The position numbers and the translations under genes were made by a program. From contig MU053379.1 in NCBI GenBank assembly GCA_013239625.1, forward strand, positions 4,545,229 through 4,609,228: a stretch of 64,000 nucleotides of DNA, read 5' to 3'. Origin of the DNA: Lama guanicoe (Eukaryota). The notes beneath the pieces are model-generated. The model did no database searches. It saw only the letters and a list, made by a program, of their open reading frames with translations, and was not told the DNA's origin. Shown here in pieces: positions 1 through 18,069 of this stretch (position 1 is the stretch's first letter; each line of letters opens with the position of its first letter).

Positions 1-194
1 CCTAACTGGGCACCCCACCACCCCAGAGCTGTGCCCCTTAGAGCCAGGAGTGACTCTAATCTCTCAAACCCAAAGACCACAGTGGCGGTGGGGGGAGAAG
101 TAAAAACGAGGCTTGCTCCTAAGTAGGGGCCTAACTGTCAGGGAGGAGGCAGCACAACTAGAATGCTGCGGAGCAGCTGTGAACCCAAGGCCAT

Positions 195-262
195 CTGTTC
201 ATTCAAACGGTGTTTACTGAGCCCTTGCTGTGGCTCACACACAGTGTTAGATGCTGGAGACA
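195..262 (-). mobile_element. L2 LINE 3' end remnant
   Basis: TTCATTCAAACGGTGTTTACTGAGCCCTTGCTGTG...GTGTTAGATGCTGGAGACAC resembles the reverse-strand L2 3' terminus (from memory). Confidence 0.55.
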
Positions 263-1749
263 CACCTGAAGGCTCCCCGCCCTCCCGCCTTCCTGCTGCT
301 GCTCTGCTACCTCTCCGGGTTCAAGCCTTGTGTCTTCAACAGAACTTGAAGCTGAATAATGTCCTCTTAACCAGCCCTTCTGGGGCCGAAGAGGCTGTGG
401 CTCTAGGCTGTCATTTAGTTCTGTCTCTCAGCCTCCTTCTCTGTAAGTAAAATCAGGAACACCTCCCCTAGAGTCACGAGAACGAAATGAAAAGCGATTA
501 TATAGGAAACAAGGAAACTTCAGAGCAGCAAGACACCCACCCCTGCAGGCATGCAGGTCAACCCTCGTTCTCACTGAGTGCTGCTGGGACTCGGAGTTCT
601 GTACATTAAACCCAACGTCACCGTCTGGGGCTTTGTAAAGACACTGCAGTGTCACTACCGACCCAGAGATGCTAGTTCACCGTTTCCACTTAGCCGGCAG
701 CTAATTTTTTTTAATATTCCACACATTTCTCCCACTTAAGAGGAGGGTCGCCTACACTGAAGCGCCCACCCAGCTTCTAAATGCGTCCTGACACCGGAGC
801 GCCCGGATTCTCAGGAAGGCAGGCAAAGGCGAGCCCCGGGGAGCCAGAAGGCGGGGGGACGCAGCACACCGCGGGGACGCGCAGCACCGGCAGACCTCAC
901 CTGCGCACGGGTCCCGCCGCTCCGCAAGGAGGCAGTCAGTCCCCCAGCCAGCGCTCTGAACTGTAAACTCTGTCCCCGAGTCCCCCGCCGGCGGGTCCCG
1001 TTCTGGTGAGCCTGCTGCTTTAAACAAGAACCCTGCAGAAAGTCGGCCCAGGTTCCGTGAGCTGACACGCTCACGCGCGGGAGGAACCACAACCGCACCC
1101 AGCGGGTACCCGGCACGCGGGGCGCAGCCCGGCCCCACCGCGCCTCCCCGCCAGCCGAGCGGCCCCTTCACCGGAACCGGCTTCCTGGGTCCCCGGGCGT
1201 CACCTCCAAGGGGCCGCACTGCAAACTGTACGGGAGGGAGGACCCGGTACCGGGTCCGGTGCGGCTCGACGGGCTCGACCCGCTCCGCCCTGGCGCCACC
1301 TGCCGTGCGGACTCGCGGCCTCCGCCGGCCACTCGTCCCGGTGACCGGGCTTCCGCGGCCGCCTGCCGGCTGGAATCGGCGGATCGCAGGAGAACCGGGA
1401 ACGCGAAGCAGGAGCCCACGCCCACACGGTCTTCTCCGGCCCAGGGGCTTCCGCGCAGCCGCGAGGCAGCCGCGCCCCCCAGCGCCGGGGGCGGGACCTA
1501 CGAGGCTTTGCCCAATCAGAAGCCCCCTAGCCTCGGGCCGGCGTCTGTGACGCGGCTGGACCAATGAAGACTCGAGCGCGGGTTTGCTGTGGTCTTCTGG
1601 GAACGCGCCTCTCCCGGAAGCCACCTCCCAAGAGCCACACCTGGGCGACGCTAGCTTGTGATCTGCCGTCCCACCGGCTGTCAAAGCTGCCCGTCTGGGG
1701 CGGGGGCGGGACCAAGCGCTCGCGTCTGCGCGGAGCTGGCGGGCCGCGC

Positions 1750-2126
1750 GCGGGAACCCCCGGAGGAGCCGGCGAGACTCGCTCTGTCCCGGGAGGAGGG
1801 GGCGCGGCGGCGGGTGGCTCTCCCCAGGCCGCCTCGGGCGAGCGACGAGGGGCGCGGAGCCTCCGCGGGCCCGGCCCAACCGTCAGGGTTCTCCGTGGAT
1901 CCGCGGCCCGCGTGACTGGAGCCGCCCACACGACCCGGGTCATTTTCCCTAGGCGGACCGACCTGAGGCCCCCGCTGACCCGGATCATCTTCTCCTCGCC
2001 GACCCGTGGCCACTGGAACCGCCCACACTGACCCGGGACTTCACGCCGACCTGGGGTCGGCCCGTTGACCGGAGTCATTACCCTCACGCTGACCAAGGCC
2101 GCGGCCCCGCCGTCATTCCCGCGCAG
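1750..2126 (+). other. NXT1: NXT1 non-coding exon 1 (start approximate), donor CAG|GTAGGT at 2126/2127
   Basis: First strong donor downstream of the promoter elements. NXT1 has a 5' UTR exon plus one coding exon. Confidence 0.6.
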
Positions 2127-2667
2127 GTAGGTGAACCGCACAGGTAGGTGCCCCCGCGCAGGTTAGGTGCCCCGCGCAGGTAGGTGCCCCGCGCAGGTTA
2201 GGTGCCCCGCGCAGGTAGGTGCCCCGCGCAGGTTAGGTGCCCCCGCGCAGGTTAGGTGCCTCCGCGCAGGTTAGGTGCCCCGCGCAGGTAGGTGCCCCGC
2301 GCAGGTTAGGTGCCNNNNNNNNNNNNNNNNNNNNNNNNNNNNNNNNNNNNNNNNNNNNNNNNNNNNNNNNNNNNNNNNNNNNNNNNNNNNNNNNNNNNNN
2401 NNNNNNNNNNNNNNNNNNNNNNNNNNNNNNNNNNNNNNNNNNNNNNNNNNNNNNNNNNCCCCGCGCAGGTTAGGTGCCTCCGCGCAGGTTAGGTGCCCCC
2501 ATGCAGGTAGGTGTCCCGCGCAGGTTAGCTGCCCCAGCGCAGGTTAGGTGCCCCGCGCAGGGTAGGTGCCGCCCCCGCGCAGGGTAGGTGCCACCCCCGC
2601 GCAGGTAGGTGCTCCCGCGCAGGTTAGGTGCCCCTTGAAGGTTAGATGCCCCCGTGCAGGTAGGTGC
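2118..2667 (+). repeat. GC-rich minisatellite, 17-19 bp unit CCCCGCGCAGGT(T)AGGTG
   Basis: About 11 units before and about 11 after an N gap. Units degenerate toward the 3' end. Confidence 0.95.
2315..2458. other. Assembly gap (144 N) inside the minisatellite
   Basis: Run of N. Confidence 1.
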
Positions 2668-4349
2668 AGGCCCCCTGACCGCGGCCGCCCGCGCAGTGAG
2701 ACGTCTCCTGGCCTCGAGGCAGGTCTTGGGCGGGTCGAAGCGCCGCAGGAACGGCCCCCTCCCTGCCGACTCCCAGACGGCGGCTGGTTGAGCTGCGTGG
2801 GTGGAGGCGGAGGACCGAGGTGCTGGGAAACCGCGCGGACGCCGGGTGGTGGGGAGCTCCAGTGAGGGAGACAGGGCCGCAGGGGGAAATTACAGACTAG
2901 TGGTCCGGACCGTGCGCGCACGGACTTGACCTCGGAAGAGCAGGAGCCAGTGAGAGGGTCACTCTGTTTTTGTAGACGGCAGATCCGGGCGGAGCCGACC
3001 CTGGACCCTCATCCACACTGCGTTTTCACTTCTCATTAGTGAAGTTGTTACGGTAACATCCCCTCTCGGTGACCATTGAAGGACGCGGTGCCTGTAAATC
3101 GCTAGGAAAGTCGAGATCGGAGTGAGAGTGTGCAGGAGTTGGACTTGAGGTCCGCTGAGGAGCTGGCAGGGCCGGGTCCTCACCTGGCCCCGACCCCACA
3201 CTCCTTTCTAGGACTCAGCTCCTGCCCAGCCTCTCCAGTTCTCCCCTAGAGGCACTGGCCTCCTAGTTCCTCAGCTCGTAGGAGAGCCCAACTCCTTCCC
3301 AGCCCTGCCTGCGATCCTTCATCCTTCCCATAAGCCGATTTTTTTTTAAAGCAAAGGTTTTTGAAATGAAAAAAAATTCAGTATTTAAGTCTGTAAATCT
3401 AAGCACATCCAGTATTTTAGTAATGTTGCCCTTTGTTGGATTTTTGTTTAGTGAAGTTTTAATCACACAAAAAGAATACAGCTATGACGGTTGTACCATA
3501 TGCTGAAGAAAAACAAATAATAATATTTCTGTATGCTTCAGGACTTTTTTTTAAGGAAATGTGATATTTGAGCTACAATTGAAATTCTTTTTTGCTGCCA
3601 TCACCTCTTCACTCCCCACCCCATAGGACGTCTTCCATCTGACCTGTCTTCCATGGGCTCAGGGGACATCCCTGTGCTCCCAGAAGCTGCGCATCCTCCC
3701 TTCTCATCCCAGCCCGCTGCCAGCTTTGCTTCCTAGAGCCCCTCGTGGGGGTTGTGGCTCCACCTTGGTCCTGTCCTGCCCCTGTGGCATTTGTTTTCTT
3801 AAGCCGGCCTTCTCTTCACCCTCCCAGTGCCTGTGGGTGCCCTCCCAGCAGGCCGTCACCAGATGATGAGCTGTGCCGTCTGATTGGCCTGGATTGGGCC
3901 ACTGTTCCTGCCCCGTGCTGCACTGTCTTTACCCGGGATAAACTGCTTCCCTGCTTCTCAGGGGCAGTCACACCTGTCCCAGGCCTACAGGAGAAAGTGG
4001 CATTCCATACTGTAGCTTATGAGATGAGATTGTGGAAATTCACAGTGACAGCTTCCATCTCTGGGCGTCAGGCTCTTTAACCGCGTGCGCGGCATGCAGT
4101 CTTGTGCCGCCTGCGCGGTGGTGCCCAAGTTGGGGTGGCCCGTGTAGCAGGAGCGACTGAGGCTGGGTGGGGCCTCGCATTGGCATCGGCACACACCTGG
4201 GTGGTCTCCCCACAGAGCAGCAGGATGTCCTTTGCAGGGCAGCATGCACGGTGACATTCACACAGGCCTCTTCACCCTTCCTGCCCTGCAGCCCAGCGCC
4301 CTCGGGTGCAGGGAGCATCTGGGCGGAGGCCTCCTCCTGTGGACCAGAG

Positions 4350-4772
4350 ATGGCGTCCGTGGACTTCAAGACCTACGTGGACCAGGCCTGCCGCGCGGCG
4401 GAGGAGTTCGTGAACGTGTACTACAGCACTATGGACAAGCGGCGGCGCCTGCTGTCCCGCCTGTACTTGGGCACGGCCACCCTGGTGTGGAACGGGAACG
4501 CCGTCTCTGGACAGGAGTCCTTGAGTGAGTTTTTTGAGATGCTGCCTTCCAGCGAGTTCCAGATCAACGTGGTGGACTGCCAGCCCGTTCACGACGAAGC
4601 CACCCCGAGCCAGACCACCGTCCTTGTGGTGATCTGTGGGACGGTGAAATTCGAGGGCAACAAACAGCGGGACTTCAACCAGAACTTCATTCTGACCGCC
4701 CAGGCCTCGCCAGGCAACACGGTGTGGAAGATCGCCAGTGACTGCTTCCGCTTCCAGGACTGGGCGTGCTAG
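4350..4772 (+). CDS. NXT1: NTF2-related export protein 1 (p15), 140 aa
   Basis: [25 protein letters not shown]...[13 protein letters not shown]. Kozak GAGATGG. Acceptor CCCTGCAG| at 4291 upstream. Confidence 0.98.
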
Positions 4773-4933
4773 TGGGGGCAGGGCGACACCCCCAGCCTGC
4801 ACTCTGCCCTCGCCCGAGTCCAGGGGCCCCTTTCTGGGCACGTGCGTGTTTGTCATAGATGCCTTTTCAAAATAGTAAGATTCTCTATTTTTCTACTTGC
4901 CCAGTAGAGACCCTGGTTCTGGAAATTCTGATG

Positions 4934-4939
4934 AATAAA
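4934..4939 (+). terminator. NXT1: NXT1 polyadenylation signal AATAAA
   Basis: AATAAA about 160 nt after the stop, followed by GT/T-rich sequence. Confidence 0.8.
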
Positions 4940-7900
4940 ACAGTGAGTGTTGCTTCTTCCTCTCTCCTGGTGTGTCCGGGAGGTTGTGGGCGGGAGGAGG
5001 AGGTGCGCAGGCAGCAGTCCCAGCAGAAGGCATTGCAGACCGAGGCTGAGATCCAGGGTGGAGCACCTCGCGGAGGCCCAGGGGCGCCCCCGGGGGCACA
5101 GAGCCGGCTCACGGCCCCTCACACTGGAATCCCTCGAGGCACTCTGAAACACCAGGCCCCTACACCGACTGGCATGAGGGTGCCTGCCCCCTCCCCCCAG
5201 GCCAGAGCCACTCCATCTGGTGCGTTATTAAAGGGAAACACCTGTGCCCGTGGTGATGGTTGACTGCAGGGCTGTGTGGGGCGGGCCCCGGCCGCCAGTT
5301 TCCCTGGTAACTGATGAGCCAACCTGATGTCAGTTCTCCTGTAAATGGGCGCCGCCTCCCCCCGCCGGCTGCGGCACACAGTGGAGTGTCCCTCTAGGAC
5401 CTCGCGTCAGACATGTAAGCACCCCTGTCCACTAAGCCCCTGACATCGCAGTCACTGCCTCCGGCCCCTGTGGTCCCTTGGCTGGGCATCCACAGGGCTT
5501 GCCGGCCTGCGGGGCACTGCCCAGCAGAGGCTGATTCGGCAGGAGCTGCTGCTGGACTTCAGGCTCAGAAGCCCCCTGTGAGGGGTGGGGTGGGATGCCC
5601 CCTTCTCATCTCGGGCCTGGGTGGGAGGCAAGTCCCACCAGGACTCGGCTCAGAGCGAAGTCCCTGGGGCCTGAAGGGCTGCCTGAGAAGCTTCAGGCCA
5701 GCAGCTGTGGGCGTCCCTGAGGGCAGGAGGGAAGTCAGAGTGCAGACCTCCAGGGGCTCCTCGTGTCCACCAGGCCCTCCTTCCGGACTAGAAGGAGGGT
5801 TTGCAGTCGGGAGAGCTGTCAGATGAAAGACCGCCTCCCCCAGACCACCGAGCTAGCCTGGCTCTGCGACTCCGACGGAGGAGGACAGGCTGGGCAGGGG
5901 AAAGACTTGGGGGAGCCAGCCTCTCTGTGCTCCTTGTCTTCTGTTATTTGGAAAGCAGGTGAGAGGGTAGATGTTCTGGCAGCCCTTTTGGGCTGTGAGC
6001 CCCATTGGGCCACATGAAAGGGACGGAGGAAAGGAAAGCAGGTCAACCTCAGGGAGTCCCCACCAGCCTTTGGTGACCACCCTCACCCCCAGCTTCTCTC
6101 AGGGGAGTAAGAAGCACGTCCACCTGACTGAAGCCGCTACTGTCTGGGGGCCTGTTTACAATCAGTGCCAAGATGGAGGAAAGAGTGTGAAACAGGACAG
6201 GACTCTCTCCTTCCTGTGTAAGGCGCCCTTACACACCAGTGGGAGAAATCAGACAAAAAGGGCAACAGAACAAGAAAATGGGAAACCACAAAAATATGCA
6301 TGGAGGTGGAGCGGGAGAAAGGGAGGCGATGCGGCACTAGCGAGTCACGGTAGTGGAAGCAGGCGCGGTGTTAGCCGTGGACACGGGCCTCCAGCTGTTA
6401 CCCACCAGGGTCCTTGGACTCCTTAGTCAATAGAAGTTGACAAGAGGCCGGGCGAGGGATTCAGGCGAGGCTTTCCTGGGGCCCGTGCCGCAGCAGACGG
6501 AGCGAGAACAAGTGACAGGCGCCCCTGCTCGCTCCCCGGGGTCAGGGGCAAGTGAGCTGGTCCTTAAATGGGGGCGGGTGGGGACAGGTCCAGGGCTCGT
6601 GCGGGAGGGGTGGCTCAGGTGGTCGGCACCACCAAGGGGTGCGCAGGGATCACGCCCAGCACCACAGAAGTGGCAGTTGGGTTCTTGGTCTTCCTGTATC
6701 TTGTTCACAGTGGGCCCCAGCTGCACATGCACGCAGTTATTTTTAGTCCCTTGTAGTTCCTTTGTGTTCTGTTTCTCCAGGGGAGTCTGTCCAGGTGCGG
6801 GCCCTGCAGCCAGGGGTCCCGGGTCCCAGCCTGTCTCACATCCAGTCCTCCCCGGTGGGTATCATCTAACTGATGGCAGAAGGTACCATCGCCCAGCAGA
6901 CTGGCCAAGGCCAGGAAACCCCAATCTCCCCAGCAGATTGGGACCTCGGGGGCAACTGGTCTGCACGATGGGAGATGGTGGGAAGTGGGGTCGGGCATTT
7001 GGGGGAGCAATTTCCTGGGAGAAAGCGGGGAAGGGGTGAGGTGCCCCCAGCAGGGGAGGGGGTGAGATGCCGCGTCCCTGCCTCTAGCCCAGAGAGAAGG
7101 GGCGTTAACAGGATCTGCTGAGCCTGACGGGCCCCCACTGGACACAGCCTGCAGGGACCACTGTCCCCGGGCTGTGCGTCCCCGGGGCAGGCTGGGCAGG
7201 GTGGGTCCTGCTGCCGTGTCGGGAGGGCTCCCACTCCCTATGACAGAGCAGAGGGGCCTGACCCCAGGGACCAGATGGAGAGTTGCGGGACAGAGGACTG
7301 CTGTACCGGGGCAGCTTGTGCTTAGGGGAAGCCCGGGTTGGTTTCCTGGGCTGAGACGCAGGCCTGAGTGAGGAGCCTGGCCTGAGGGGTCTCTTGGGTG
7401 CTGGGTGACTGGGCCCCTGGGAGAGGCTGAGAAGCAGGTGGACAGATTCTCAAGGGCTCCTGGAGCTGCTCAGGGAGCGAGAGCCCCCCAGAGCAAGAGG
7501 TCTTGTTCTAAAGCCGGAAGATCTCAGCAGTGTTGGGGCCTCAGAAAGCCCACTCAGGTGGCCCAGGAGAGAAGGCCCCAGGTTGAGGGACAGCCAACTC
7601 CTCCCCTCCAAAGGCTCACGGCTAAGAAACTCGGGTGACAGAGGGCGCAGGGGCCAGGAGGGTGCCGGCCCGGCTGAGGGGTCCAGGCATTCAGCCTCCC
7701 CTCGGCGTGCGGGGCTCTGGGGGATGTGGGTGAATGCAGGCCTTTCCCGTCTGCCAGTGAGCGCCAGGCGTCAGCAGGGCACCCTCGAAGAGCTCATCAG
7801 ACAGCACTTGATCTGTGGGTCGCTGCCTGGCGGACCGACCGCCCTGGTCTGCCCAGGGCTGGGGGTTCCTGGATGGGTTTTTAAAGCTAAGATCGAGAAA

Positions 7901-12812: not shown

Positions 12813-13699
12813 ACCAGTGACAGAGGGTGGTGGCTCACCCTCTGTAACCATGAAGCACATTCTGTTCTTATTGAGACTTGGAACCAGAATGGGAAAGTTT
12901 GCAGGGAGGAGATGCGTTTGCAGGAGGAGGTTGGGGACCTGGATGGAGGGCAAGAGCCGTCCTTATACTGCAGAAAGAGTAAACTGTCAGCCCGTGCACC
13001 TGGGCATGAGCCCCGGTCTCCAGCAACTCAGATGGATTCTGGAAATCCTCCCGAGAAGGAGCATGACTGCAGGACCTACATCCAGGGAAAGCCGGAGGGA
13101 GAAAGGGCCAACAGGTGTGTGAGGAGGGCGGGGCTGTTCAGGAACCATCAGAACTCATATTTTTTAGATGCAGCAGAAAGTAGAGATTATGTGTAGGCTT
13201 GTACAAATCAGAAGCTAGAAAGTAGAGTGGGAAAGGTGGTGGAACTGCTTTGTCCTGTTTGGGCTTCACTGAAACCAGTGCTGACTCACTTCCCTGAGGC
13301 CACTGGCTTCTGTGCTGACCGCACCCAGAAAGGGCAGGTGGGCGCAGTGCCAGGTTCACTGGAGGTGGCAGGAAGGGCCCCTAGAACGTGCCCTACCTGG
13401 AGGAGGAGCAGGGCCTGGGCCAGCTGCCCTCTGCCACATGGCCTGCAGGCTCGCTGGCCCTAGGCTCCTTCCACCAGTGACATCGTGTGTGTCAGGGCGA
13501 GGCCTTCTATTCTGTGATGGACTTGAGAACTTAACAGCCCGAAACACATAAGCTGATGGATGGTTAACTACAGTTATTTCCAATCACTCCGTTCTGGCTA
13601 CTCCCTTCCCCTACTGCCCTGACCCAAGGGAAAAGAGGCTGCCCGAGGCCTCCTCGCTAGACCCTCACCCAGGCCCTGCTCCCCGGGACCAGGGCGTCG

Positions 13700-15200
13700 T
13701 TGGTTCACACAGCATCCCAGCCGTTTCCGGCGGATGCTTTACGGACCGTGTCAGAGACAGTAAGGAGGGTTGTTTAATACGACGACTGAGCAGAGGATCT
13801 GCCTCGTTTCTGGACCGGAAGATACGGGGTGGGATACGCGAGTGACAGGTCCGCGAACCGCGAGTGTGCCTGGGTCTGCTGGACATCTGGGAGAAATGGG
13901 GACAAACGGACGCTCCGAGCTGCGATGTCAACCCTCCAGGCTGCGACGACGCGTTCCCAACTCGGACGCGAGGCCTCCGCCGGTGCCCGGCGGTCACCGA
14001 CGGCGCGCACACACCCGGAAGCGGCGGCTCCAGCCCGAAGCTCGCAGGATCTCTGAGCACATACGGCTCCGGCTCCGCTCTTAACTGCCCGCTTGCCGCG
14101 TACCGACACCGCACCGCGCCGCTCCAGCTCAGCCCACCGCTGCCTGCGGCACGTGGCAGCGCCCCGCCCACCTCCGGGGCCGCCCCCCACTTCCGGGGAC
14201 CCGCCTGCCCACTTCTGCCCCGCCCGCTCACTTCCGGGTGCCCGCCCCGCCCTCTCCCAGGGGCCGCCCACCCGCTGTCCTGCCCTCGGGTAGAGGCTGG
14301 GGAGGAGCCAGTACGTGACCGCGCGCCCGGTAGGTCGCGCGCCTTCCTTGGGGGGCGCCCACCCTGCCCCCTCCGCGTTGCGAGAGGCGCCGAGTCGGAG
14401 TCGCAGTTTCCCACGCAGGCGCAGACTTGGCTCGCTATGGGTGACGCAATTTGCGCAGTCGGTCCAACGCACGGCCGCAGCGTGCGACGGATCACGTAAC
14501 TTCCCTGCCTCCGCAGTCGGACGTGCGCGCGCAGGACAGCCCACCGACAGGGGGCGGGGCCAGGCTCGCAGCAACCAATCAGCGTCCCCCTCTCCGCGCC
14601 GCCCCGCCCCTGTCCGTCCGTCGGTCCCAGGGCCTGGTCCTCGGAAGCGCGGTGGCGGCGGCCGGGTGGTGGGTGCGCGGCCCGCGGGGCGGGGGGCGCG
14701 GAGGGCCGGCGGCGGGCGCTGCCTGGGCTCCGATTCGGCCGGGAGGCCTCCGGGGAGTCGGGACTGGGCCGGGCCGGCCGGCGGGCGTGGGGAGAGGAGG
14801 CCACCTGCGGCCATTTCCCCGCCGGCCGCGGGCGCTGTCCTCCGGCCGGCGGCCTCTGAGGGGCTGGCCGCGCAGGTGAGGCCGGCCTCCGGGCCGCGGG
14901 CCGCGCGGAGGCGGGGCGGGGGCGGGGCCGGCGGGCCTGGAGGAGGGGCAGGTGCGAGAGCGCCGCGGGGAGCGTCTGCGCCGGGTCCGGACCGGGCGGC
15001 GGGAGGGCGGCGCGGTGCGCGGGGACCCGGCCGCTCCCGTGACCTTGTCAGCGCGCCCGTGAAGCGGCGGGGCAGCCCCAGGACGGCCTGTCAGCCGCCC
15101 GCACGGAGCCGCCTGCCGTTCGGAGGGGCCCAGGTCTCCGCTCGGGGGACACGGGCCGCAGCGCGGCCCGGGGAACGGTGACCCCGGGTAGGAGGGGTTT
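13700..15200 (+). promoter_or_regulatory. GZF1: CpG island / GZF1 promoter
   Basis: Very CpG-rich. SP/ETS array at 14161-14250, TGACGCAAT at 14442, GC box at 14551, CCAAT at 14575. Confidence 0.88.
14600..14875 (+). other. GZF1: GZF1 non-coding exon 1 (start approximate), donor CAG|GTGAGG
   Basis: Strong donor at 14875/14876. Matching acceptor TTTTGTTTTCAAAG| at 15719, upstream of the ATG. Confidence 0.65.
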
Positions 15201-15740
15201 CGGGGTTGGAAGTGGCCATGGATCCTGGGCTACTTTTCCAAGAAGTTTTGTTCATGGAAAGAGCTATCTATTTAGTTGGCTGTTTCAGACGCTGACGGCA
15301 TCCTCTAAGGGTTGCTCTCAGACGGTGGCTGCCAATGTATTTTGATTATTTGGTTTTCTGGTCAAAGTAGACATTTATTGTTGCTATAAATCCTGTTAGT
15401 TTGGGGGCTTTGGGGCTATGAGCAAACTAGAAAATGATTCAGATAAACAAATGACTCCTTTAATGTATTTCATTAATTTTAACTTTATTGCTGGTGGAAA
15501 TGTCAGACTACGTTTTCATGCTCCTATCTTAGGAAAGTGCACCAGGGCTTCAGAAACGTGCTTAGTGGCATGTGATTTGAATCTGTGTATGAGAAAAGTT
15601 AGATTTAGGTTATTAATCAGTGTAAATCCTCTGAAGAACTGAAGTAATCCTCAGAGTTTCTAATCCTTTTACTTCCATGGTTGCTCATGCACGAATAATT
15701 CTTGCTTTTGTTTTCAAAGCTATTTCTGGGAAGAAGAAAC

Positions 15741-17110
15741 ATGGAAAGTGGTGCGGTTCTGCTGGAATCCAAGTCCTCACCCTTTAACCTTCTGCGTGAG
15801 ATGCACCAGCTCCGCCTTCTGGGTCACCTGTGCGACGTGACTGTCAGCGTGGAGTACCAGGGTGTCCGTGAGGAATTCATGGCCCACAAGGCAGTGCTGG
15901 CTGCCACCAGCAAGTTTTTTAAGGAAGTGTTCCTTAACGAGAAGACTGTGGATGGTGCCAGGACTAATGTCTACTTAGACGAAGTGCAGGTTGCTGACTT
16001 TGCTTCTTTTCTTGAGTTTGTCTACACCGCAAAGGTGCAGGTGGAGGAAGACCGGGTGCCGCGAATGCTGGAGATGGCCGACAGGCTGAAGTGCTTGGAC
16101 TTGTCCGAAACTTGCTTTCAGTTGAAGAAACAAATGTTAGAGTCTGTACTTCTGGAGTTGCAGAATTTCTCGGAGTCTCAGGAGGCAGAAGGGAGCGGTG
16201 GCTCCCTGGTCACTGCTGCCACCGTCCCCGACCCTCGGGAAGGGGTGGCTGTGGATGGCCCTCTCGCCAACGGCCTGGCAGGCTCCCCAGATCCCCCGAG
16301 CGAGAGGGTGAGCAGTGGCGTGCCGCCAGGCGCGTGCCCGAGGAAACCCAAGGACAAGCCGGACAAGAGAAGAGAGGCCGCCAAGCCTCCCTACCCTAAG
16401 GTCAGGAGGGCGAGCGGGAGGCTGGCTGGGAGAAAGGTGTTTGTGGAAATCCCTAAAAAGAAGTATACCCGGAGGCTCCGCGAGCAGCAGAAGGGAGTGG
16501 AGGAGGCCGGGGAGGACCCCGGGTGCCCCCGAGACCCCAGCCCGGACACCGTGGCGACAGAGAAGGAGCTGGTGACCAAAGACGAGGACGGCAGTGCTGG
16601 GGCGGAGGCTGAGGGAGAGCTGCCGAGGGCGGGGCCCGGGGAGGAGGAAGAGGAGGAGGAGGACGGGGCCGCGGTGGGGGCGAGGAGGAGCGGCTTCCAG
16701 TGCACCGTCTGCGAGAAGGCCTTCCTGTACGAGAAGAGCTTCCTGAAGCACGTGCGGCACCACCACGGCGTGGCCACCGAGGTGGTCCACCGCTGCGACA
16801 CCTGCGGCCAGACCTTCGCCAACCGCTGCAACCTGCGGGGCCACCAGCGCCACGTGCACAGCAGTGAGCGCCACTTCCCCTGCGAGCTGTGCGGGAAGAA
16901 GTTCAAGCGGAAGAAGGACGTGAAGCGGCACGTGGTGCAGGTGCACGAGGGCGGCGGCGAGCGGCACCAGTGCCAGCAGTGCGGGAAGGGCCTGAGCTCC
17001 AAGACGGCACTGCGGCTGCACGAGCGCACGCACACGGGCCACAAGCCCTACGGCTGCACCGAGTGCCAGGCCAGGTTCTCGCAGCCCTCGGCTCTGAAGA
17101 CCCACATGAG
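15741..17110 (+). CDS. GZF1: GZF1 coding exon 1: BTB domain, linker, ZF1-5
   Basis: MESGAVLLESKSSPFNLL...LCDVTVSV...AHKAVLAATSKFF. C2H2 fingers. Donor AG|GTAGGG. Confidence 0.97.
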
Positions 17111-18069
17111 GTAGGGCGGCCCGCGGCCCTGGAACAGGCTGGCGGGCCCGGCCAGTGTGGCCGCACTGCTCAGGGGCCCTCACTAGTCTGTTCGCGCTCC
17201 CAGTCGGGAGGCTGCTTTCAGACCCCTGGATTCTCTTTCCCGGCAGAGATGCCAGGAGGTGGCTCCCTGGGCACAGGAAGTGTCGCCAGGCCCCACTGCT
17301 GGCCTCCTGCTGCCCCCTTGTCCCAACCACCTCAGTCAGGTGACACTTTTCTGGGCTTGGAGAGTACCTGCTGCCATTTAGTCTAAACTCCAGAGTTAGG
17401 ACAGTGATCTCTGGTCCCTGATTTTTGAACATCCAGTTTTTAAATAAGTTCCCTTATGGTGCTCAGTGTTTATGCCTGAAATGCAGACAGAACAGGTTTC
17501 TGCTCCCGACCTACCCTCAAACCTGGGCCAAGGCTGGTGGCGGGGTGGTCACCGTCCCATTAGTGCCATTGAACTGCCTGGTCCAGGAAGGGCTCAGTGA
17601 ACTGTGGTGGCGGCCACTGCACTCACCTTGCCGTGAAGTGAGGTGCTGACGCAGGCGCCCTGGGGACCAGCACAGCCAGCACGTTGGGAGCAGTTCTTTC
17701 TAGACGGCTTATGTCACTTGGGAGAGGATGGTAAACATTTTGATCACATGGTGGTTTGTCAGCAATGGTCCCTACGGGGTTTGTGGGAGATCAGTTTCAA
17801 TGGGGAAGCTTTACAGACCTTAGTGTCTTAAACAGCGTGCAGAGGCGTGGTCCCTGTCCACATGTGTCTGGCGACAGCCCGAACCGTGAGGCCGGCGTGG
17901 GTGGAGGCTCTGCGTCTGGTGGGGACATGGCGGTGTCGGCCTTGTGCAGAAGCAGACTCGGGGTGGCAGTCCTGGGCCTCTCACTTCCGGTCCTTCTCAC
18001 TGGGGTGCCCGGGGTAAACCGGCTTCACGAGTGAGGGTGGAAAGTGTGTTATTACAAAGTGAGCTTTGA

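What the first reader, a model, noticed from the sequence alone, without database searches (positions are those of the whole stretch)
2118..2667. Minisatellite made of tandem copies of the NXT1 exon-1 splice donor
Seen: the first unit coincides with the predicted donor (GCGCAG|GTAGGT at 2126/2127), and the junction is reiterated in at least 22 visible 17-19 bp units, likely with more in the gap. About ten units keep GTAGGT, e.g. GT at 2127, 2144, 2180, 2215, 2288, 2507, 2605, 2660. Inference: this is a ladder of competing U1 sites. Copy number could tune NXT1 5' UTR length, splicing efficiency or U1 loading near the promoter without touching the CDS of an mRNA-export cofactor, i.e. a VNTR splice-site rheostat.
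Basis: partly seen in the sequence, partly recalled or inferred. Interest (0 to 1): 0.75.

Follow-up and report, generated by a model that had tools for sequence, protein, structure and literature searches.

The report
Repeated splice donor in NXT1 intron
A short GC-rich repeat at the start of the first intron of the mRNA-export gene NXT1 really does copy the exon's splice signal at least 22 times, but this layout is already known from other genes, where only the first one to three copies are used, so it is most likely harmless.

Summary
A same-strand array of 22 visible units of 17-22 bp (consensus CCCCGCGCAGGTTAGGTG) fills 2117-2314 and 2459-2671, on both sides of the N gap. Ten units carry CAG|GTAGGT or AGG|GTAGGT, and ten carry CAG|GTTAGGT. 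The gene is NXT1: its whole 140-aa CDS lies in one exon (4350-4772), behind a good acceptor at 4291/4292.

Every plus-strand GT with at least 7/9 consensus matches between 1007 and 4841 lies inside the array.

The "competing U1 ladder / VNTR rheostat" reading is not supported. Minisatellites whose first unit spans an exon-intron boundary are a described class: F7 IVS7, IFI6, CBS, LMNB2, PDGFA (PMC1557585). In those genes only the first one to three donors are used. Five to six RNA runs hold only 0.22-0.25 of the sampled words. That equals exon 2 plus at most about 180 nt; including the visible array would need at least 0.34.

Non-source DNA runs hold 0.95-0.97 of the words, so the array is real DNA. 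Copy number and polymorphism are unknown.

This scan has already noted about eight other donor-copying minisatellites on other DNA of this same genome. Verdict: a new member of a known kind, of modest interest.

The parts
751..3000 (.). CpG island around the NXT1 5' end (GC 0.68-0.78, CpG obs/exp 0.73-1.06); the array lies inside it
1914..2126 (+). Putative non-coding exon 1 region. The transcription start is unknown. The region has no ATG and contains an old ~97-bp duplication (1914-2005 vs 2011-2094)
   Evidence: inference, no transcript data
2124..2132 (+). First donor copy CAG|GTAGGT; predicted exon 1 / intron 1 boundary at 2126/2127
   Evidence: 8/9 consensus, U1 duplex -12.6 kcal/mol; no other site with at least 7/9 matches between 1007 and 4841 outside the array
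2141..2149 (+). Second donor copy CAG|GTAGGT, 17 nt downstream; the most likely minor alternative donor
   Evidence: by analogy with IFI6 and CBS in PMC1557585
2117..2314 (+). 5' half of the minisatellite: 11 units. It is homogeneous, partly alternates 17-bp GTAGGT units with 18-19-bp GTTAGGT units (35-bp higher-order period), and keeps all CpGs
2315..2458 (.). Assembly gap inside the array (144 N, length only estimated); not filled
2459..2671 (+). 3' half of the minisatellite: 11 more degenerate units (77% matches) with CpG-decay variants (CATG, CGTG, CTTGA), two GGTAGGT units and two ATGs (2501, 2646)
2127..4291 (+). Predicted intron 1; no AATAAA/ATTAAA on the sense strand
4270..4291 (+). 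Predicted acceptor: 17/20 pyrimidines followed by CAG; exon 2 starts at 4292
4350..4772 (+). Complete NXT1 (p15) coding sequence, 140 aa, in one exon. Poly(A) signal AATAAA at 4934
   Evidence: E 1.3e-90 to PDB 1jkg p15/NXT1, 134 of 139 aligned residues identical

Best explanation
This is a GC-rich minisatellite that arose by tandem duplication (replication slippage or unequal exchange) of a ~17-bp segment spanning the junction between the non-coding exon 1 and intron 1 of NXT1. Its first unit supplies the working splice donor (2126/2127). The other 21 or more visible units are donor look-alikes that lie in intron 1 and are removed with it.

By analogy with the described genes of the same layout, the splicing machinery takes the most upstream copy. 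For a first exon this choice is also favoured by the nearby cap. At most the next one or two copies (2143/2144, 2161/2162) would be used at a low level, lengthening the 5' UTR by 17 or 35 nt with no new AUG.

The protein is untouched because the whole CDS is in exon 2. The array itself is most likely neutral. The spare copies could serve as back-up donors if the first one is mutated, as happens in F7.

What is shown: the array, the donor quality of its units, the gene, and the absence of any other strong donor. What is inferred: the exon-1 end, which copy is used, and neutrality.
For: - Array and units.
- Gene identity and one-exon CDS.
- Every plus-strand GT with at least 7/9 matches to MAG|GTRAGT between 1007 and 4841 lies in the array.
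- Predicted U1 duplex is -12.6 to -13.7 kcal/mol for the eight CAG|GTAGGT sites (the two AGG|GTAGGT sites at 2562 and 2584 were not scored) and -8.8 with one bulged U for GTTAGGT units.
- The described class, with usage limited to the first one to three donors: PMC1557585.
- RNA runs X15-X20 (4 studies) hold 0.22-0.25 of the sampled words. Exon 2 alone gives 0.206-0.219. Exon 2 plus a 77-177-nt exon 1 gives 0.221-0.267. Including the visible array gives at least 0.337.
- There is no ATG in 1700-2314 or in 4292-4349.
- The array RNA folds no better than shuffles (z +1.33).
Against: - The exon-1 end and the acceptor are predictions.
- The word-share argument rests on rounded shares of 323 sampled words in assembled contigs, which drop rare isoforms.
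- The donors here are strong, unlike the weak F7 sites. For two strong sites, in-vitro work finds a marked preference for the intron-proximal (downstream) site (PMC3413131). The 'first copy wins' rule may therefore not transfer cleanly.
- In PMC1557585 a downstream site with perfect consensus did shift splicing.
Confidence: 0.6

Rival explanations
1. Many of the donor copies bind U1 and compete, so transcripts use several of them. The copy number of the array would then set 5' UTR length, splicing efficiency or U1 loading, and so tune NXT1 output.
For: - At least 20 units have 7-8/9 consensus matches and a stable predicted U1 duplex.
- Two strong neighbouring sites can both be occupied by U1 in complex E (PMC3413131).
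- IFI6 and CBS do use three copies.
Against: - In all five described genes, use is limited to the first one to three copies, even with 25 spare ones.
- The RNA word shares of 0.22-0.25 exclude most of the array from abundant mature RNA.
- Polymorphism is untested.
- Intron 1 has no poly(A) hexamer that U1 would need to suppress.
Confidence: 0.12
2. Coincidence of place. NXT1 exon 1 ends somewhere else, at a weaker donor or further upstream. The array would then be an ordinary GC-rich minisatellite in the promoter, in exon 1 or deeper in intron 1, whose unit merely resembles a donor.
For: - No transcript evidence fixes the exon end.
- The transcription start is unknown.
- From my own recollection, not tested: GC-rich minisatellite cores often contain GCAGG-like motifs.
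Against: - No other GT with at least 7/9 consensus matches exists on the sense strand between 1007 and 4841.
- The array starts exactly where the unique sequence ends in CAG|GT.
- The RNA word share fits a short exon 1 plus exon 2.
Confidence: 0.2
3. Assembly artefact. The array, or its size, was created by mis-assembly around the gap.
For: - A gap sits in the array.
- The 20 nt on either side of the gap are identical, so the two ends might overlap.
Against: - Non-source DNA runs from three studies hold 0.95-0.97 of the words, although the array makes up 11% of them and every word in it spans a unit junction.
- The two halves differ in unit variants, so they are not one piece copied twice.
Confidence: 0.03

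Closest known systems
Human F7 intron 7 minisatellite (37-bp VNTR, 5-9 units; Borensztajn et al. 2006, PMC1557585)
   Same: The first unit spans the exon-intron boundary, so the authentic donor is followed by copies of itself in the intron. The copies are functional but silent back-ups.
   Different: - F7 has an internal coding exon, a weak donor (UGG|gugggu), longer units and fewer copies.
- Here the exon is a first, non-coding exon in a CpG island, the donors are strong (CAG|GTAGGT), the units are 17-19 bp and at least 22 are visible.
- Donor usage was not measured here.
Human IFI6 (6-16) intron 2 minisatellite (Turri et al. 1995, as described in PMC1557585)
   Same: It has many short units (authentic donor plus 25 pseudo-sites) that provide multiple donors. 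This is the closest match in unit number and size.
   Different: - In IFI6 the first three donors are constitutively used and change the protein.
- Here any alternative use would change only the 5' UTR.
- The original paper could not be read.
CBS IVS13 31-bp VNTR, LMNB2 100-bp repeat, PDGFA intron 4 81-bp repeat (cited in PMC1557585)
   Same: All reiterate an exon/intron junction. Only the first donor (LMNB2, PDGFA) or the first three (CBS) are used.
   Different: Their units are longer and the exons are internal and coding.
Other donor-copying minisatellites noted by this scan in the same genome (DFFB exon 1, SCUBE1 exon 10, FAM20C exon 5, PRDM15 exon 7, TOP3A exon 5 and others)
   Same: They have the same layout in the same genome. 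Two follow-up reports reached the same 'known layout, first copy used' verdict.
   Different: - These are unchecked AI notes on other loci, and mostly concern in-frame coding cases.
- I did not inspect those sequences.
Tandem GYNGYN donors (PMC1779574; STAT3, PMC11162779)
   Same: Neighbouring alternative donors are chosen by U1/U6 register.
   Different: Those are two GT dinucleotides 3 nt apart within one site, not a minisatellite.

Membership tests
Minisatellite whose first monomer spans an exon-intron boundary (donor-reiterating minisatellite: F7, IFI6, CBS, LMNB2, PDGFA type) | Head-to-tail array of several or more units of 10-100 bp | tested here: met
   22 visible units of 17-22 bp; TRF scores 224-339; 13 matches against 0.01 expected
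Minisatellite whose first monomer spans an exon-intron boundary (donor-reiterating minisatellite: F7, IFI6, CBS, LMNB2, PDGFA type) | The first unit contains the last bases of an exon and the authentic donor | tested here: inconclusive
   The exon end at 2126 is predicted only. It is supported by the lack of any other donor with at least 7/9 matches between 1007 and 4841 and by the RNA word share. No junction read was available
Minisatellite whose first monomer spans an exon-intron boundary (donor-reiterating minisatellite: F7, IFI6, CBS, LMNB2, PDGFA type) | Downstream units keep a donor-like sequence on the sense strand of the gene | tested here: met
   All 22 units keep AGG(G)T; 10 have GTAGGT and 10 have GTTAGGT. 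They lie on the same strand as the NXT1 CDS
Minisatellite whose first monomer spans an exon-intron boundary (donor-reiterating minisatellite: F7, IFI6, CBS, LMNB2, PDGFA type) | Transcripts use only the first one to three copies | tested here: inconclusive
   This is indirect only. RNA runs hold 0.22-0.25 of the words, against at least 0.337 if the visible array were in mature RNA. Junctions were not seen
Minisatellite whose first monomer spans an exon-intron boundary (donor-reiterating minisatellite: F7, IFI6, CBS, LMNB2, PDGFA type) | Copy number varies between individuals (VNTR) | not tested
Short-read contigs could hardly have resolved this anyway
NXT1 / p15 (NTF2-related export protein 1) gene | Encodes a ~140-aa NTF2-like protein nearly identical to solved NXT1 | tested here: met
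   E 1.3e-90 and 134/139 identical to 1jkg_A. A BTB + C2H2 zinc-finger ORF of the GZF1 type lies 11 kb downstream on the same strand

The most novel reading that the evidence does not exclude
The array would be more than a by-product. It would be a promoter-proximal platform of 22 or more strong U1-binding sites inside the NXT1 CpG island, whose copy number changes U1 loading, transcription or donor choice of an essential mRNA-export cofactor.

Because its sites are strong, it would also be a natural test of 'first copy wins' against 'intron-proximal copy wins'.

The scan has noted about eight other such arrays in this genome. Together they would suggest that the donor motif itself seeds minisatellites in this lineage.
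Probability: 0.1. Interest if true: 0.6.

Novelty: new member of a known kind. Interest (0 to 1): 0.3.

Why it matters
If the best reading holds, this is one more example of a described curiosity and has no effect on the NXT1 protein.

Its modest value lies in what sets it apart from the studied cases. It sits at a first, non-coding exon in a CpG-island promoter, and it has many strong donors only 17-19 nt apart. F7, IFI6 and CBS have internal exons, and in F7 the sites are weak.

Two published rules give opposite predictions for such a locus. One is upstream-first scanning (PMC1557585). The other is intron-proximal preference when both sites are strongly bound (PMC3413131). Here the outcome would be harmless to the protein and easy to read from RNA-seq.

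The recurrence of donor-copying arrays in this genome also hints at a general mutational bias that may be worth counting genome-wide.

Tried and rejected
1. Read laying on window 1200-5200 with three RNA runs and one DNA run.
   - The Rfam scan was limited to 1-4600.
   - I did not use the NXT1 protein in the look-up of encoding contigs, protein searches or the atlas, although Logan RNA contigs found that way might have shown the junction.

2. Metagenome scan with the first 38 nt of exon 2: 0 hits.
A query made from the array or from the exon-1 end could only bring back host genomic copies, which would amount to looking up the gap's letters.

3. I did not search for a joined exon 1 + exon 2 sequence, because joined sequences are barred. 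Each exon was handled on its own.

4. MaxEntScan is not installed. I used consensus matches and ViennaRNA duplex energy with the U1 5' end instead.

5. RNA structure that might hide or expose donors: none (z +1.33).

6. Known RNA families in 1-4600: none at E up to 0.1.

7. Papers linking NXT1 to a tandem repeat or VNTR: none.

8. Turri et al. 1995 is not held in the library.

9. Telescripting need: rejected as a driver, because intron 1 has no AATAAA/ATTAAA.

10. Organism. It is not determined here. Other notes of the scan guess a llama/alpaca-type camelid or a pig relative, and I did not test this.

Full report
**What is there.** The sequence from 2117 to 2671 is a head-to-tail array on the plus strand, broken by the 144-N gap at 2315-2458.
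- Tandem Repeats Finder gives 2118-2314 (period 17, with a 35-bp higher order; 11 copies; 90-93% matches; score 311-339) and 2459-2667 (period 19; 11 copies; 77%; score 224).
- My parse yields 11 + 11 = 22 visible units of 17-22 bp, with consensus CCCCGCGCAGGTTAGGTG.
- The consensus 18-mer occurs 13 times with up to 2 mismatches, all within the array, against 0.01 expected from shuffles. It occurs nowhere else in the window.
GTAGGT starts at 2127, 2144, 2180, 2215, 2288, 2507, 2562, 2584, 2605 and 2660. GTTAGGT starts at ten other places.
- The 5' half is homogeneous and keeps both CpGs in every unit.
- The 3' half is degenerate and shows CpG-decay variants (CATG, CGTG, CTTGA).

**The gap.** Both flanks are the same array on the same strand.
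- The last 20 nt before the gap equal the first 20 nt after it.
- The scaffold join is therefore plausible, but the register and the hidden unit number cannot be known. The ends might even overlap by one unit.
- Reading frame is not an issue, because the region is non-coding.

**Is it real DNA?** DNA runs from samples not flagged as the source (X4-X9; studies P1-P3) hold 0.95-0.97 of the 323 sampled 31-mers of 1700-5000.
- The array accounts for 346 of the 3097 valid word positions, or 11%.
- A 31-mer is longer than a unit, so each word in the array spans a unit junction.
- These runs must therefore contain most of the tandem arrangement. An assembly artefact is very unlikely, although the total length remains open.

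**The gene.**
- The ORF 4350-4772 (+) encodes 140 aa that match solved NXT1/p15 (1jkg) at E 1.3e-90, with 134 of 139 aligned residues identical. This is NXT1 of a non-human mammal, with its whole CDS in one exon.
- A pyrimidine-rich acceptor (17/20 pyrimidines, then CAG) ends at 4291, 58 nt before the ATG.
- AATAAA lies at 4934.
- A BTB + C2H2 zinc-finger ORF of the GZF1 type lies at 15702-17114 on the same strand. From my own knowledge, this fits the usual NXT1-GZF1 neighbourhood.
- The array lies inside a 2.2-kb CpG island (751-3000).

**Is the array the exon-1 donor?**
- On the sense strand, every GT with at least 7 of 9 matches to MAG|GTRAGT between 1007 and 4841 lies in the array.
- The first unit starts 9 nt before CAG|GTAGGT at 2126/2127. 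This is the same geometry as F7, where the first unit holds the last 4 bp of the exon.
- The eight CAG|GTAGGT sites give predicted duplexes with the U1 5' end of -12.6 to -13.7 kcal/mol; the two AGG|GTAGGT sites (2562, 2584) were not scored. GTTAGGT units give -8.8 kcal/mol in a register with one bulged U. One-nucleotide bulge registers are a described class (PMC4856993, abstract seen).
- The donor of NXT1 exon 1 is therefore very probably a unit of the array, most simply the first. This remains inference.

**The decisive test failed.**
- The look-up of sequencing runs found five RNA runs and one probable one (X15-X20, four studies), and 14 DNA holders.
- I gave up the look-up of the NXT1 protein in assembled RNA contigs.
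- I limited the Rfam scan to 1-4600.
- A metagenome scan with the first 38 nt of exon 2 found nothing.
- I searched no joined exon-exon sequence.

**Indirect RNA evidence.** The RNA runs hold 0.22-0.25 of the sampled words. The expected shares are as follows.

| Content of the mature RNA | Expected share |
|---|---|
| Exon 2 alone | 0.206-0.219 |
| Exon 2 plus a 77-177-nt exon 1 ending at 2126 | 0.221-0.267 |
| Exon 1 running on through the visible array to 2659 | at least 0.337 |

- The bulk of the array is therefore not part of abundant mature RNA, which speaks against main use of far-downstream copies.
- The resolution does not separate the first donor from the second or third.
- Contigs drop rare isoforms, and the shares are rounded.

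[quoted passage not shown] 2006, PMC1557585).
- F7 IVS7: 37 bp, 5-9 units, only the first donor used. The copies are functional, and the next one is activated when the first is mutated.
- IFI6/6-16 intron 2: authentic donor plus 25 copies, first three used.
- CBS IVS13: first three used.
- LMNB2 and PDGFA: first only.

The precedents argue against a broad competition ladder.

One caveat is real. The F7 sites are weak, and in that study a perfect-consensus downstream copy did shift splicing. In-vitro work with two strong sites finds double U1 occupancy in complex E and a marked preference for the intron-proximal site (PMC3413131). The sites here are strong, so the rule cannot be transferred with certainty. 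The word-share result is what tips the balance toward upstream use.

**Other readings checked.**
- The array RNA is not unusually structured (z +1.33).
- No Rfam family matches 1-4600.
- Intron 1 has no poly(A) hexamer that U1 would need to suppress.
- Use of donors in the 5' half would add no AUG to the 5' UTR. The first AUGs appear at 2501 and 2646.
- No paper links NXT1 with a tandem repeat.

**The same thing elsewhere in this genome.** The scan's notebook lists about eight other minisatellites built from a splice donor on other pieces of this genome: DFFB exon 1, SCUBE1 exon 10, FAM20C exon 5, PRDM15 exon 7, TOP3A exon 5, and unnamed exons 3, 8 and 9.
- Two follow-up reports reached the same 'known layout, first copy used' verdict.
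- These are unchecked notes, and I found the F7 paper before reading them.
- They make this single case less special. They raise the separate question of whether donor motifs seed minisatellites in this lineage.

**Verdict.** The rheostat part is unsupported. This is a new member of a known kind, of modest interest.

Noticed in passing
window 1914-2005 vs 2011-2094: An old ~97-bp tandem duplication lies just upstream of the array, in the putative exon 1. Local alignment scores 74 against 27 +/- 4.7 for shuffles, and a GTCATT..CCC motif recurs. The region seems prone to duplication.
   Followed up: partly
window 265 and 900, minus strand: Two strong donors on the minus strand (CAG|GTGTGT and CAG|GTGAGG, both 8/9) sit at the upstream edge of the CpG island. 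They may belong to a divergent non-coding transcript from a bidirectional promoter.
   Followed up: no
window 2497-2671: The 3' half of the array shows CpG-decay variants (CATG, CGTG, CTTGA), while the 5' half keeps every CpG. This fits a polar array whose 5' end is younger or protected within the unmethylated island.
   Followed up: partly
window 13600-17114: A second GC-rich island lies at about 13.6-15.2 kb. It is followed by a 470-aa ORF with a BTB domain and C2H2 zinc fingers (GZF1-like) on the plus strand.
   Followed up: partly
window 3200-3600: An AT-rich patch (GC 0.39) sits in the middle of intron 1. It may be a transposon remnant.
   Followed up: no
other pieces of this genome (scan notes s1-860871, s1-863110, s1-858091, s1-860032, s1-862706, s1-858100, s1-858898, s1-864130): At least eight further minisatellites built from a splice donor have been noted in this genome.
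   Followed up: no
window 4291-4296: A second AG lies 5 nt after the predicted acceptor (CAGCCCAG|CG). It is a possible minor alternative acceptor in the 5' UTR.
   Followed up: no
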